NCBI RefSeq assembly: GCF_001194135.2
Contig: NC_069000.1
Span: 13,450,301-13,513,649 of the forward strand
Length of the DNA: 63,349 nt
Origin: Octopus bimaculoides
Taxonomy: Eukaryota
Direction: 5' to 3'
Below the pieces are notes generated by a model. That model was not told the origin of the DNA. It saw only the letters and a list, made by a program, of their open reading frames with translations, and did not search any database. Below, one piece after another: positions 20,095 to 63,177 of the stretch; position 1 is the stretch's first letter, and every line of letters begins with the position of its first letter. The translations under genes were made by a program, and so were the position numbers.

Positions 20095-20440
20095 ATGCGA
20101 GCTGGCAGAAACGTTAGCACGCCGTACTTTAATAAGTACCAGTTACGCACTGAGGTCGATATAATCGACTTAATCCGTTTGTATGTCCTTGTTTGTCCCC
20201 CCTGTGTGTAGCCCCTTGTGGGCAGCAAAGAAATAAGAAACATTAGCACGCCGGGCGAAATGCTTAGCGGTATTTCGTCTGCCGTTACGCTCTGAGTTCA
20301 AATTCCGCCGAGGTCGACTTTGCCTTTCATCCTTTTGGGGTCGATAAATTAAGTACCAGTTGCGTACTAGGGTCGATCTAATCGACTGCCCCCCTCCCCA
20401 AAAATTTCTCGCCTTGTGCCTAGAGTAGAAAAGGATATTA
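20095..20440 (+). mobile_element. SINE-B (T1b tail) with a nested 5'-truncated T2-tail SINE at 20125-20235
   Basis: 18-bp TSD AGAAAC(G/A)TTAGCACGCCG at 20107-20124 and 20236-20253 inside the host head. Confidence 0.9.
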
Positions 20441-22254
20441 TATTTTATGTTGTTACTCAACTACCGAGCAGCGATCACCAAAGCAAAAACAGTTTACTAA
20501 GGCATATAAGCAGCTGTTGAATTATCATGGATAACTTTACGTCACTAAGAATATTCTCATGAAAGTACGAGTATTGCAAATAGTGATGTTTTTTTAAAGA
20601 TATGTAAAAATTGAACTCCACAATGGTCATGAGAAACCGAAAGATATGAGACGGATCCATAGGGAACATTATACGATGAACGAAATAAAAAATTATTTGT
20701 GCTTTGATTTTGTTGATTTATTTTAATATATCTGAAAGATCTTTCAGATATATGAAAATTATTTCAACTGAAATGTGTATCTTCTTCTCTCTCCCGTCAT
20801 CTCTCCCTCTCTCTCTCTCTCTCTCTCTCTCNNNNNNNNNNNNNNNNNNNNNNNNNNNNNNNNNNNNNNNNNNNNNNNNNNNNNNNNNNNNNNNNNNNNN
20901 NNNNNNNNNNNNNNNNNNNNNNNNNNNNNNNNNNNNNNNNNNNNNNNNNNNNNNNNNNNNNNNNNNNNNNNNNNNNNNNNNNNNNNNNNNNNNNNNNNNN
21001 NNNNNNNNNNNNNNNNNNNNNNNNNNNNNNNNNNNNNNNNNNNNNNNNNNNNNNNNNNNNNNNNNNNNNNNNNNNNNNNNNNNNNNNNNNNNNNNNNNNN
21101 NNNNNNNNNNNNNNNNNNNNNNNNNNNNNNNNNNNNNNNNNNNNNNNNNNNNNNNNNNNNNNNNNNNNNNNNNNNNNNNNNNNNNNNNNNNNNNNNNNNN
21201 NNNNNNNNNNNNNNNNNNNNNNNNNNNNNNNNNNNNNNNNNNNNNNNNNNNNNNNNNGAGAGAGAGAGAGAGAGAGAGAGAGAGAGAGAGAGAGAGAGAG
21301 AGAGAGTAATGGCATGAACTCGTATATTAATACAACCTTGCTACACCGAAATCGCTCGGCGGAGCGTAACTTAATCCCTATAAGATAGTTTTGGGAGCCA
21401 CTTTAATCACAAACAGAATATTACCACTTGTATATTATTGACACCTGTAAACAGATGTCTGCCATCTGTAACATGTAACCATCAGTCTTTTAACGCCTGG
21501 CGTGATCGTTTTTGTGGCTTGATAAATTCCGCTAACTAAAGATAAAATATGACGGATTACTACTAGGACACAACTTTCAATTTACCATTTAAACACCCAT
21601 CAAATATCTCTTTAAATATAATTATCATAATCTCTGATTTAGTGACGCGATCTATTTCCATGTATTCTTTCTTAGTTTTACCTCATTTGCACAAATCATT
21701 AAGTCATTGTTACGGTTTGTGCGCCCAATATTTCGAAATAGATTCTTAATAGTTGTATTCCCTAAACTTAATTGCAATTTCATGTCCCATGGGATATGAT
21801 GCATAAAAACAGAATTATAGATAATTCATGATAGCAACAAATGACGATTTAATGCAATGAAGATATCATTACAACGGTCTTCTATTACACAATGATTAGC
21901 ATTTTATCGAGATTCATAAAACTATTTGTATCTAATTCCCTATTCATAAATTGTCTTTACAGTTTGTAACTCGTGTGTGAAATATATGTTATTTTTCAAG
22001 TGGTTATTTAATGTAATATTATTTTTTTTAAAGTCTTCTGTTTACAATCCGTTATTTAACTTGTGATGAGAAGATATTCAAGACAATAATTGAAAATTTT
22101 TATATTAAGATATTTTTCGAGTTAAGAAGGTAAACTTAACCCTCAAGTCTACATTCCTTAAAGACGAAAATCTTGGAAACAATGAAAAAACTTTGCGAAG
22201 TGTTAAATTATAGGAGCTATAATATTCAAGAAAATGAAAATAAATTGACAATAG

Positions 22255-22380
22255 GTGCAGGAGTGGCTGTGTGATAAGAAACTTGCTTCCCAATCACATG
22301 GTTCCGCGTTCGGTCCTATTGCGTTGTACCTTGGGCAAATGAATTCTGCTATAGCCTTAGGCCGACCAAAACTTTATATC
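22255..22380 (+). mobile_element. SINE-A head
   Basis: GTGGCTGTGTGATAAG box A-like, GGTTCCGCGTTCGGTCC box B-like, CCTTGGGCAA. Confidence 0.85.
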
Positions 22381-22539
22381 AGAAATTATGTATACACAAA
22401 CCTATCGCTATTCAATTGCTTGGAAACAAAGATCATTTTTTCCAGATCTGAGGGATTAAATAAACACTGGGATAAATGCTGAGAGAGAGAGAGAAAAAAG
22501 AGAGAAAGAGAGAAAGAGCACACACACACACACACATAC

Positions 22540-62000: not shown

Positions 62001-62600
62001 NNNNNNNNNNNNNNNNNNNNNNNNNNNNNNNNNNNNNNNNNNNNNNNNNNNNNNNNNNNNNNNNNNNNNNNNNNNNNNNNNNNNNNNNNNNNNNNNNNNN
62101 NNNNNNNNNNNNNNNNNNNNNNNNNNNNNNNNNNNNNNNNNNNNNNNNNNNNNNNNNNNNNNNNNNNNNNNNNNNNNNNNNNTTGTGATACATAAATGTC
62201 AAAATCAATATTAATTTTTTTTATTTTTTATTAGCATTCTATTTTATCAAAAACTATCACTTTACCGTATATTATTCTGAGAATAGAATAGAATAACAAT
62301 AGATTATGGTTCGTTTGAGCGATGATATAGTTTCGAACCTCAAAGTATTCCCGGCCCTTTTTAGGACTTTTTCATGAAGAACCATTGCCAATTGAGTCAA
62401 TAAATTACTAAGCAGTTATCGAAAGATCCTATTTCCTATCCTACCACTTCCTGGCACAGCAATGTTTTCATGGCCCAGCTGCTTATGACTGAACTGGCCA
62501 AAACCTCTTAGATACAAATAAACGTGTTGCTTATCTGCAGATCAACTGTCGCCAAGCTAATATTCCTTTGTCAATATCTCTCTAGATATCGCTCTAGCAG

Positions 62601-62813
62601 CAAGGCTGCGAGCTGGCAGAATCGTTAGCACGCCGGGATAATGCTTCGCGGCATTTCGTCCGTCATTACGTACTGAGTCCAAATTCCGCTGAGGTCGACT
62701 TTGCTTTTCATCCTTTCGGGGTCGATAAAATGAGTATCAGTTGAACACTGGAACTGATGTAATCAAATTACCCGCTTCTTCTAAATTTCTGACCTTGCGA
62801 CAAAATTTGAAAC
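62601..62813 (+). mobile_element. SINE-B full length, T1a tail, with TSD
   Basis: CAATATCTCTCTAGCAG at 62814-62830; matching sequence at 62572-62600 is partly tandem-duplicated. Confidence 0.9.
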
Positions 62814-63177
62814 CAATATCTCTCTAGCAGTGGCCATCCTCCTCATAGATGTGAATCATATCATATTATAAAGACATGAACATAAAACGAGATCTTGAAA
62901 CGTTTATCCACCATCAATTGTTCTTGTCATAGCTAAACCATTCTTATAATTCATGTTTTTAGATCATCGCTACCATTACAATCATCATTGTTATCACTCT
63001 TCTCCTCTTAACTACCTTAAAAATTCCGATTAAAATGTGTTTTTTTTTCTTTTGCTTGTTTTTTGTATTTTCTTCTATGCTTTTCAATTATTTGGAAATT
63101 ATTGAATAAAAATTTCGTTATTATCATTCCTTGTCTGTCTTTCTTTCTCATTTACATGAATACATACACACACAGAG

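What the first reader, a model, noticed from the sequence alone, without database searches (positions are those of the whole stretch)
20107..62830. SINE-B tail type predicts target-site sequence: T2 inserts at AGAAAC, T1a at CAATAT
All three T2-tail copies end ...AAGAAATA and have 16-18 bp TSDs beginning AGAAAC in element orientation (20107/20236, 41216/41466, 44627/44904). T1a-tail copies have 17-21 bp TSDs beginning CAATAT (28017/28246, 62572/62814) or TCAATAT (46586/46744), with CAATTA at 58.8 kb. The motif appears in both TSD copies, so it belongs to the target and not only to the tail. One shared head and core thus appears to swap 3' modules, each directing insertion to a different hexamer. 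Two explanations fit: different partner LINE endonucleases, or tail-target annealing during priming. I do not know of this being described, but the sample is only about seven copies.
Basis: partly seen in the sequence, partly recalled or inferred. Interest (0 to 1): 0.75.

Follow-up and report, generated by a model that had tools for sequence, protein, structure and literature searches.

The report
SINE tail type matches insertion hexamer
Copies of a short mobile element in this octopus DNA carry alternative 3' ends, and each kind of end sits at its own six-base insertion site; this is a clean local example of a rule already known from other animals, not a new principle.

Summary
All three T2-tail copies in the window have 16-18 bp target-site duplications (TSDs) that start with AGAAAC in both copies. 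Six T1a-tail insertions have TSDs that start with CAAT(A/T)(T/A), or TAAT in one. A TSD caller with a random-position null reproduces them, and no assembly gap lies inside any element or TSD.

The interpretation needs correcting in three ways.
- T2 shares its head and core with a third tail type (T1b), not with T1a. T1a is an older, diverged subfamily.
- The tails are variants of one module: a hairpin with the loop CTTGT and compensatory stems, a spacer of 11-12 nt containing GAAA, then the hexamer.
- In octopus rhodopsin introns, a different element that shares only the last 26 nt of the T1a tail is also followed by CAATAT.

The hexamer therefore travels with the 3' end. I think it is junction homology: the end of the RNA template and the start of the target pair during target-primed reverse transcription by a partner LINE. 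Endonuclease specificity is not excluded.

Tail-dependent TSD starts are already published for AfroSINEs and for Sauria SINE versus Bov-B. The sample stays small (3 + 6), and two T2 copies outside the window lack AGAAAC.

The parts
20125..20235 (+). T2-tail SINE-B copy. It is 5'-truncated (starts in the core) and nested in the head of another SINE-B copy.
   Evidence: Tail matches the T2 consensus at 96%. The sequence was read directly.
20107..20124 (+). 5' TSD of the 20.1 kb T2 copy, AGAAACGTTAGCACGCCG. It is part of the host SINE-B head.
   Evidence: 18 bp with 1 mismatch to 20236-20253.
20236..20253 (+). 3' TSD of the 20.1 kb T2 copy, AGAAACATTAGCACGCCG.
20097..20439 (+). Host SINE-B copy with a T1b tail (...GTAGAAAAGGATATT), interrupted by the T2 insertion.
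41232..41465 (-). Full-length T2-tail SINE-B copy.
   Evidence: (tail 97%).
41466..41481 (-). 5' TSD, AGAAACTAAATGCTCT.
41216..41231 (-). 3' TSD, AGAAACTCAATGCTCT.
44645..44888 (-). Full-length T2-tail SINE-B copy, with an 8-nt internal duplication in the core.
44904..44921 (-). 5' TSD, AGAAACCTATGATTTATC. It is separated from the head by about 15-20 extra nt, which include an inverted copy of the TSD start (44894-44903).
44627..44644 (-). 3' TSD, AGAAACCTATGATTTATC.
28035..28245 (-). Full-length T1a-tail SINE-B copy.
28246..28263 (-). 5' TSD, CAATATCAATTAAGAGAA.
28017..28034 (-). 3' TSD, CAATATTTATTAAGAGAA.
46607..46743 (-). 5'-truncated T1a-tail copy.
46744..46764 (-). 5' TSD, TCAATATCTTCCAAATAATTT.
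46586..46606 (-). 3' TSD, TCAATATCTACCAAATAATTT.
46873..47055 (+). T1a-tail copy with internal deletions.
46855..46874 (+). 5' TSD, TAATTTATTTCTGCTGGTAA.
47056..47077 (+). 3' TSD, CAATATATTTTTGCTGCTGTAA.
58845..59062 (-). T1a-tail copy.
59063..59071 (-). 5' TSD core, CAATTAATT. It extends further if a 5-nt indel is allowed.
58836..58844 (-). 3' TSD core, CAATTAATT.
62602..62813 (+). Full-length T1a-tail copy.
62572..62601 (+). 5' TSD, CAATATCTCTCTAG...CAG, with a 12-nt internal duplication.
62814..62830 (+). 3' TSD, CAATATCTCTCTAGCAG.
17563..17953 (+). Two T1a-tail copies in tandem (17583-17775 and 17797-17935), with three copies of one target: 17563-17580 CAATTTTAG..., 17776-17793 TAATATTAG..., 17936-17953 CAATATTAG....
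3077..3194 (+). Old T1a-like copy in which no TSD is detectable.

Best explanation
SINE-B is a LINE-dependent short retroposon of octopuses. Its 3' module consists of a small hairpin (4-bp stem, loop CUUGU), a spacer of 11-12 nt containing GAAA, and a terminal hexamer or heptamer: CAATAT(T) in T1a, GGATATT in T1b, (A)AGAAAC in T2.

The reverse transcriptase of a partner LINE (one LINE, or closely related ones) recognises the hairpin. First-strand synthesis then starts at a nick where the freed bottom-strand end (5'-ATATTG-3' or 5'-GTTTCT-3') can pair with the last six bases of the RNA. The hexamer is therefore both the end of the template and the start of the target. This explains why it is conserved after the tail and is also present in the distal TSD copy.

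Each new copy is followed by the hexamer supplied by its target. A transcript that reads past the tail would carry the hexamer again, so the specificity would be inherited with the tail. In T2 the target hexamer completes a second unit of the tail's own 7-mer (AAGAAAT + AAGAAAC).

Shown here: the TSDs, the motifs, their segregation by tail, the hairpin and spacer homology, and the second element with the same 3' end at CAATAT. Inferred: RNA-DNA pairing as the selecting step, read-through transcription, and the identity of the partner.
For: - TSDs start with the motif in both copies: 3/3 T2 and 6/6 T1a.
- The motif follows the 3' module, not the SINE body. The rhodopsin-intron element shares only AAAGGCCTTGTGCCAAAATTTGAGAC and is followed by CAATAT in O. 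vulgaris and O. sinensis, and by TAATAT in O. bimaculoides.
- All three tails align as hairpin + spacer + hexamer. 82.6% of stem cells pair, against 60.6% in shuffles. The covariation score is 0.483 against 0.156 (0/500 shuffles reach it). The true register beats all slid registers. Stem pairs 2 and 3 flip from G-C to C-G between T1 and T2.
- The position homologous to the T1a target motif is a conserved part of the T1b tail (GGATATT). The one clear T1b TSD (L124 55-111) starts inside it: ATATGTGAATTCTCT / ATACGTAAATTCTCT.
- The T2 tail end is A+AAGAAAT, followed by a target-derived AGAAAC, which matches the 7-mer at 6 of 7 positions.
- T1a 5' copies tolerate mismatches (CAATTT, TAATTT, CAATTA), as pairing would.
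- Precedent. The 3'-end repeat type predicts the first TSD base in RTE-related SINEs and LINEs, including two AfroSINE types in one genome (PMC6007223; PMC13295347). The first of these papers cites pairing of the RNA 3' end with the target for I factor, R1Bm and R2Ol.
Against: - Only nine informative insertions, all from one 63-kb window.
- No partner LINE carrying either tail was found, so the RNA 3' end is not known. Nothing shows that SINE transcripts include the hexamer.
- The hairpins are too small to stand out thermodynamically (z = -1.9, +0.1 and -0.3). The stem covariation amounts to roughly one evolutionary event.
- An exact 6/6 match in all T2 copies is stricter than the 1-2 nt microhomology reported for RTE elements. 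It could equally reflect an endonuclease with a hexamer preference.
- Two T2 copies elsewhere are followed by other sequence. Both lack TSDs and abut other SINE-B fragments, so they may be rearranged.
Confidence: 0.5

Rival explanations
1. Different partner LINE subfamilies, each with an endonuclease that nicks at its own hexamer (bottom strand ATATTG/ or GTTTCT/). The RNA ends before the hexamer and plays no part in choosing the site.
For: - The motif begins exactly at the inferred nick in every case, and the base before it is not conserved.
- All T2 copies match the hexamer 6/6.
- Several LINE clades are recently active in O. vulgaris: RTE, Dong-R4, CR1, L1-Tx1 (PMC13282606).
- It is established knowledge that SINEs take on the target preference of the LINE that moves them.
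Against: - The three tails share one hairpin loop, spacer length and GAAA motif, so the partners would be close relatives. A change from CAATAT to AGAAAC in endonuclease specificity between close relatives is a larger step than a change of six template bases.
- In T1b the equivalent heptamer is clearly part of the conserved tail.
- The T2 target looks like one more copy of the tail's own 7-mer.
Confidence: 0.3
2. Small-sample or ascertainment effect. The hexamers are a weak preference, or a local peculiarity of this window, and would blur genome-wide.
For: - Only 3 T2 and 6 T1a insertions could be scored.
- Two T2 copies from other sources show no AGAAAC.
- AGAAAC is itself enriched in the window because SINE-B heads contain it.
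Against: - The chance probabilities are about 1e-8 even with slack.
- The TSDs were recovered by an algorithm at offset 0-1.
- Only one of the three T2 targets is a SINE head.
- The intron element in three other assemblies repeats the CAATAT association.
Confidence: 0.1
3. The hexamers are simply the last bases of the tails, the true TSDs are 6 nt shorter, and there is no target preference.
For: The hexamer is conserved after every tail. A consensus builder would include it in the element.
Against: The distal (5') TSD copy is not adjacent to any tail, yet it carries the hexamer contiguous with the rest of the duplication in 9 of 9 cases.
Confidence: 0.03

Closest known systems
RTE-related SINEs and LINEs whose 3'-end repeat type predicts the first TSD base: AfroSINE (CAA)n versus (GGTTTT)n subfamilies in the elephant, and Sauria SINE versus Bov-B (Nishiyama & Ohshima 2018, PMC6007223; Nakatsuka & Ohshima 2026, PMC13295347)
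   Same: Retroposons in one genome that differ at the extreme 3' end insert at different target bases. The explanations on offer are the same: the RNA 3' end influences the nick site and/or the priming.
   Different: There the correlated part is 1-2 nt plus a T-run about 10 nt upstream (Tn-TA). Here it is a 6-nt motif with no Tn-TA signature (0/9 have T|A at the nick). The tails here end in a unique sequence after a hairpin, not in a long microsatellite.
Stringent-type LINE/SINE pairs with a 3' stem-loop plus terminal repeats (eel UnaL2/UnaSINE1 and zebrafish ZfL2; Kajikawa & Okada 2002; from my own knowledge)
   Same: A short conserved hairpin near the 3' end, followed by a short terminal sequence where reverse transcription starts. 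SINEs share this module with their LINE.
   Different: No partner LINE was found here. Loop identity and stem covariation are the only support for the hairpin. Those systems are not known for a strict hexamer target.
Target-specific LINEs that use read-through target sequence at the RNA 3' end for precise priming (R1Bm, SART1, R2Ol, I factor; cited in PMC6007223)
   Same: The downstream target sequence is carried on the template and pairs with the nicked target, so the specificity perpetuates itself.
   Different: Those elements hit one repeated genomic locus (rDNA or telomere) and have sequence-specific endonucleases. The octopus SINEs hit dispersed hexamers.
Mosaic or 'jigsaw' SINE superfamilies with a conserved core and exchangeable LINE-derived tails: CORE-SINEs including octopus OR1/OR2, and the Meta, V and Deu SINEs of molluscs (PMC4758252, PMC11481361, PMC4824008)
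   Same: A tRNA-like head, a roughly 45-nt core conserved across hosts (found here in more than 120 metagenome contigs of other hosts), and alternative 3' modules.
   Different: Those papers do not link tail type to a target motif. Whether SINE-B is OR1/OR2, or a CORE-SINE at all, could not be tested (one search was inconclusive).

Membership tests
LINE-dependent SINE (non-autonomous non-LTR retroposon) | Short dispersed copies flanked by target-site duplications that differ from copy to copy | tested here: met
   About 17 loci in 63 kb. Nine copies have TSDs of 9-21 bp above the null.
LINE-dependent SINE (non-autonomous non-LTR retroposon) | 5'-truncated copies with intact 3' ends | tested here: met
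   Copies 20125-20235 and 46607-46743 start inside the element, keep a complete tail and have TSDs.
LINE-dependent SINE (non-autonomous non-LTR retroposon) | Head derived from a pol III gene (tRNA), with A and B boxes | tested here: inconclusive
   ARAGORN found no tRNA. Rfam gave no tRNA hit even at E <= 10 on a full copy. By eye there is only a B-box-like GAGTTCAAATTCC.
LINE-dependent SINE (non-autonomous non-LTR retroposon) | 3' tail shared with a partner LINE | tested here: inconclusive
   None of the three LINE remnants whose 3' ends were read (2754-3038-, 6899-7412+, 23920-24520+) carries a T1a or T2 tail. A non-SINE-B element shares the last 26 nt of T1a, but no ORF lies upstream of it.
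RTE-type insertion signature (Tn-TA) | T-run about 10 nt upstream of the nick, and T|A at the nick | tested here: not met
   0/9 targets have T|A at the nick, and there is no consistent T-run at -10.
CORE-SINE superfamily (includes octopus OR1/OR2) | A roughly 45-bp CORE domain shared with MIR and other CORE-SINEs | tested here: inconclusive
   A 45-nt segment is conserved in contigs from other hosts. No Repbase or Dfam library was available.
Stringent-type 3' module (stem-loop recognised by the LINE reverse transcriptase) | A conserved hairpin near the 3' end, kept by compensatory changes | tested here: met
   The loop CTTGT is the same in the consensus of all three tail types and is mutated in only a few individual copies. 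The stems are UGGC/GCCA, GGGC/GCCU and GCCC/GGGC. 82.6% of cells pair and covariation is above 500/500 shuffles. Caveat: the hairpin is very small and its folding energy is not significant.
Stringent-type 3' module (stem-loop recognised by the LINE reverse transcriptase) | Dependence of retrotransposition on the hairpin and the terminal sequence | not testable with these tools
   This needs a retrotransposition assay.

The most novel reading that the evidence does not exclude
One LINE machinery recognises the CUUGU hairpin, and the last six bases of whatever template it carries decide where it inserts. Under this reading a SINE lineage retargets itself from CAATAT to AGAAAC simply by changing its terminal hexamer. 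That would be a naturally reprogrammable, RNA-guided target choice for dispersed, non-rDNA retrotransposition.
Probability: 0.2. Interest if true: 0.65.

Novelty: new member of a known kind. Interest (0 to 1): 0.35.

Why it matters
If it holds genome-wide, octopus SINE-B would be an unusually sharp case of a retroposon's 3' end dictating its insertion site: six bases, rather than the one or two seen in RTE-related elements. SINEs make up about 11.6% of the O. vulgaris genome (PMC13282606).

It would provide a natural set of matched templates (same body and same hairpin, different terminal hexamer). These could separate endonuclease specificity from template-target pairing in target-primed reverse transcription.

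It would also help annotation. Consensus builders will absorb the hexamer into the element, and TSD callers will then mis-set the boundaries.

Tried and rejected
Attempts to enlarge the sample:
- A protein search with the open reverse frame of T2 found one ENA contig only (L002). That copy has no TSD.
- A protein search with the LINE C-terminal fragment at 23.9-24.5 kb found nothing.
- DNA pattern scans: viral contigs gave one unrelated hit for the core pattern and none for the B-box pattern. GTDB genomes gave nothing for the B-box pattern. JGI metagenomes gave more than 120 contigs, but from other hosts and sharing only the 45-nt core.
- A rhodopsin query gave three orthologous 24-kb octopus loci. 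They hold T1b copies, one rearranged T2 copy at the very end of the O. vulgaris locus, and the T1a-tail element. They hold no T1a or T2 insertion that is present in one species and absent in another, so no empty site could be shown.
- A representative search with a retroelement ORF of the window returned no octopus proteins. One look-up was lost on a protein that is not on record.

Search for a partner LINE in the window: three ORF remnants were followed to their 3' ends (2754-3038-, 6899-7412+, 23920-24520+) and none carries a T1a or T2 tail.

Ideas considered and dropped:
- T2 and the SINE-A family share a tail. SINE-A ends in ...AAGTAAAAGAATA with variable ends and no AGAAAC.
- An RTE Tn-TA signature. 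It is not present.
- The T2 'TSDs' are all SINE heads. Only one of the three is.

T1b TSDs: only one was clear, so a third target logo could not be made.
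Full report
What the window is. It is AT-rich eukaryotic DNA with 18 runs of N and many microsatellites. It holds no tRNA gene or Rfam family at gathering score. The repeat under study was found again in the rhodopsin loci of Octopus vulgaris, O. bimaculoides and O. sinensis, so the window is octopus DNA. 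A blastn search seeded with four copies finds about 17 SINE-B loci in 63 kb.

Gaps. None of the N runs lies inside a scored element or between an element and its duplications. The closest is 58684-58693, about 140 bp from the 3' duplication of the 58.8 kb copy. The program's warning therefore does not affect the finding.

Checking the observation. The T2 tail (...GCCCCTTGTGGGCAGTAAAGAAATA) occurs three times and nowhere else in the window. Each copy is flanked by a 16-18 bp duplication that starts with AGAAAC in both copies:
- 20107-20124 / 20236-20253
- 41466-41481 / 41216-41231
- 44904-44921 / 44627-44644

The duplications are:
- 28246-28263 / 28017-28034
- 46744-46764 / 46586-46606
- 62572-62585 / 62814-62827
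- 59063-59071 / 58836-58844
- 46855-46874 / 47056-47077
- a tandem pair at 17563-17953 with three copies of one target

I wrote a TSD caller that looks only at the flanks. It recovers these duplications at 0-1 nt from the tail end, with scores of 13-18 for T2 and 8-17 for T1a. The first copy of the 17.6 kb pair was the exception: I had given the caller a wrong 5' coordinate, so I aligned that one by eye. In 3000 random pseudo-elements the 99th percentile is 8, and a score of 12 or more occurs in 0.1%.

The 5' duplication copy never touches a tail, so it reports the target. It reads AGAAAC in 3/3 T2 copies. In T1a it reads CAATTT, CAATAT, CAATAT, TAATTT, CAATTA and CAATAT. From the window's own k-mer frequencies, and allowing +-2 nt of slack, the probabilities are about 2.5e-8 and 6e-8. 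Segregation by tail gives Fisher p = 0.012.

Qualifications.
- The 20.1 kb case is a 5'-truncated T2 copy nested in the head of another SINE-B copy. Its 'TSD' is the head sequence GGC-AGAAACGTTAGCACGCCG. It is still a valid insertion at AGAAAC, and it shows that T2 and T1b heads are themselves targets.
- Two more T2 copies found outside the window are not followed by AGAAAC and have no TSD. One is on an ENA metagenome contig (L002). The other is at the end of the O. vulgaris locus (L123 24118-24259). Both abut other SINE-B fragments and look rearranged.
- One old T1a-like copy (3077-3194) has no detectable TSD.

An alignment of twelve copies shows that T2 shares its diagnostic head and core bases with a third tail type, T1b (...GGCCTTGTGCCTAGAGTAGAAAAGGATATT). 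The shared bases are GGCAGAAACGTTAGC, GGGCGAAATGC, GCGGTATTTCGTCTG and GATAAATTAAGTACCAGTTGCG. T1a copies differ (GGCAGAATCGTTAGC, CAAAATGC, GCGGCATTTCGTCCG, GATAAAATAAG...GAACACTGG) and match their tail consensus less well: 78-90%, against 94-97% for the window's T2 copies. T2 is therefore a T1b-type body with a new 3' region, and T1a is an older sister subfamily.

The tails are also related to each other. Each contains a 4-bp stem closing the same loop CTTGT: UGGC/GCCA in T1a, GGGC/GCCU in T1b, GCCC/GGGC in T2. Then comes a spacer of 11-12 nt with a conserved GAAA, and then CAATAT(T), GGATATT or (A)AGAAAC. On 23 copies, 82.6% of stem cells pair, against 60.6% in shuffles. The covariation score is 0.483 against 0.156 (0/500). 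The true register beats every slid register. Pairs 2 and 3 flip from G-C to C-G between T1 and T2. The hairpins are too small to be significant by folding energy, and the covariation is essentially one event, so this is suggestive rather than proven.

The motif follows the 3' module. In the rhodopsin intron of all three octopus species there is an element with no SINE-B body. It ends ...AAAGGCCTTGTGCCAAAATTTGAGAC, which is the last 26 nt of the T1a tail. It is followed by CAATATTTCCC in O. vulgaris and O. sinensis, and by TAATATTTCCC in O. bimaculoides. No ORF lies upstream of it and no TSD was found, so I cannot say whether it is a truncated LINE.

In T1b the heptamer at the equivalent position is a conserved part of the tail. 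The one clear T1b duplication starts inside it: ATATGTGAATTCTCT / ATACGTAAATTCTCT (L124 55-111). In T2 the tail ends A+AAGAAAT, and the target-derived AGAAAC, with the preceding A, reads as a second 7-mer unit.

Mechanism. I read the hexamers as junction homology: the last bases of the template and the first bases of the target. The most economical account is as follows. A partner LINE reverse transcriptase recognises the hairpin. First-strand synthesis then starts where the nicked bottom strand can pair with the terminal hexamer of the RNA. Every new copy is followed by the target's hexamer, so a transcript that runs past the tail would regain it.

This rests on the shared hairpin, which suggests the same or closely related enzymes. 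A change of six template bases is then a simpler step than a change of endonuclease specificity. It also rests on the T1b homology, on the 7-mer repeat in T2, and on the mismatches tolerated in T1a targets. It is not shown directly.

The rival reading is distinct LINE subfamilies, each with its own hexamer-specific endonuclease. It fits the exact start of the motif at the nick and the 6/6 matches in T2, and I cannot exclude it. I give the two readings 0.5 and 0.3. Chance or ascertainment gets 0.1. The reading that the hexamer is tail only, with no target preference, is contradicted by the 5' copies.

Comparison with what is known. The principle is published. Nishiyama and Ohshima found that the 3'-end repeat type predicts the first TSD base in RTE-related SINEs and LINEs. 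Their examples include AfroSINE subfamilies ending in (CAA)n or (GGTTTT)n within the elephant genome. They discuss both nick-site choice and priming by base pairing, citing I factor, R1Bm and R2Ol (PMC6007223). Nakatsuka and Ohshima show the same for Sauria SINE versus Bov-B (PMC13295347). Exchange of LINE-derived tails on conserved SINE bodies, with several LINE partners, is documented in molluscs (PMC4758252; PMC11481361).

What differs here is the length and sharpness of the motif (six bases), the absence of the RTE Tn-TA signature, and the hairpin-spacer-hexamer layout. I found no paper that describes this for octopus SINEs. Octopus repeat papers list hundreds of unclassified SINE families without target analysis (PMC13282606).

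The 45-nt core of SINE-B is present in more than 120 metagenome contigs from other hosts. It is therefore one of the widely conserved SINE domains. Octopus OR1/OR2 are reported as CORE-SINEs (PMC4758252, PMC4824008).

Limits. The verdict rests on nine insertions in the window plus one related element in three assemblies. No orthologous empty site and no partner LINE could be shown.

Verdict. It is a new and rather sharp example of a known kind of tail-dependent target choice. It is worth a genome-wide check but is not a surprise to specialists.

Noticed in passing
window 17563-17953: Two T1a copies lie in tandem, with three copies of one target sequence (17563-17580, 17776-17793, 17936-17953). 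Either the same CAAT site was hit twice, or there was unequal crossing-over between TSDs, as described for bivalve SINE arrays (PMC11481361).
   Followed up: partly
window 44889-44903: Extra bases lie between the 5' TSD and the head of the T2 copy. They include an inverted copy (44894-44903, ATAGGTTTCT in element orientation) of the first 10 nt of the TSD. This looks like a snap-back at second-strand synthesis.
   Followed up: no
window 62586-62597: The 5' TSD of the T1a copy carries a 12-nt internal tandem duplication (ATATCGCTCTAG) that is absent from the 3' TSD.
   Followed up: no
window 17548-17562, 28264-28278, 46764-46778, 46840-46854, 59072-59086, 62557-62571: Targets of T1a copies have TTTG, TTGT or TGGT within 8 nt upstream of the nick in 5 of 6 cases. 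This resembles the tail's own ...TTTGAAAC, so target recognition may extend beyond the hexamer.
   Followed up: no
window 2590-3038 (-), 6899-7412 (+), 23920-24520 (+), 39002-39367 (+), 18674-18868 (-), 55314-55478 (+): Remnants of other mobile-element ORFs: a LINE C-terminal domain whose 3' UTR ends in (AAT)n; an RTE-like C-terminus (GRPKNSW); a CCHC C-terminus; a reverse-transcriptase motif; a C2H2 finger; and a mariner-like transposase end. Of the three whose 3' ends were read (the first three), none carries a T1a or T2 tail.
   Followed up: partly
window 11473-11649, 15105-15345, 36360-36593; L123 19532-19749 and 20154-20363: A second SINE family (SINE-A, ending ...GACTGAAACAAGTAAAAGAATA) has a TG/TA microsatellite directly at its 5' side in the four full-length loci (window 15105 and 36360; L123 19532 and 20154). 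The 5'-truncated 11473 copy lacks it.
   Followed up: no
L003-L122 (JGI metagenome contigs): More than 120 contigs from other host-associated metagenomes share only a segment of about 45 nt of the SINE-B core (TTTCATCCTTTCGGGGTCGATAAA..AGTA). This part is a domain conserved across hosts. The hosts were not identified.
   Followed up: partly
L123 22440-22712 (-) and L124 18935-19205 (+): T1b copies in O. vulgaris and O. bimaculoides share the same 45 nt after the tail (ATCTTCAAGTGGCAACCATCTTCAGACC...). They lie on opposite strands relative to rhodopsin and have different 5' flanks. This could be a composite repeat or an inversion.
   Followed up: no
L123 24000-24259: A cluster of SINE-B pieces in permuted order: a 5'-truncated T2 copy, then head positions 49-108, then head positions 1-56. 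It is absent from the orthologous place in O. bimaculoides (L124, about 19956), so it is a lineage-specific and rearranged insertion.
   Followed up: partly
window, whole: AGAAAC occurs 69 times, against 38 expected from shuffles. CAATAT is not enriched (75 against 87). SINE-B heads of the T2/T1b type and the T2 duplications account for much of the excess.
   Followed up: partly
window 33135-33246 (-), 52213-52313 (-); L124 528-686 (-): Further SINE-B-like heads and cores are joined to other 3' regions (for example ...GTGTCAAAGTTAGAAAAATTAGAAAG). More tail types exist than the three studied here.
   Followed up: no
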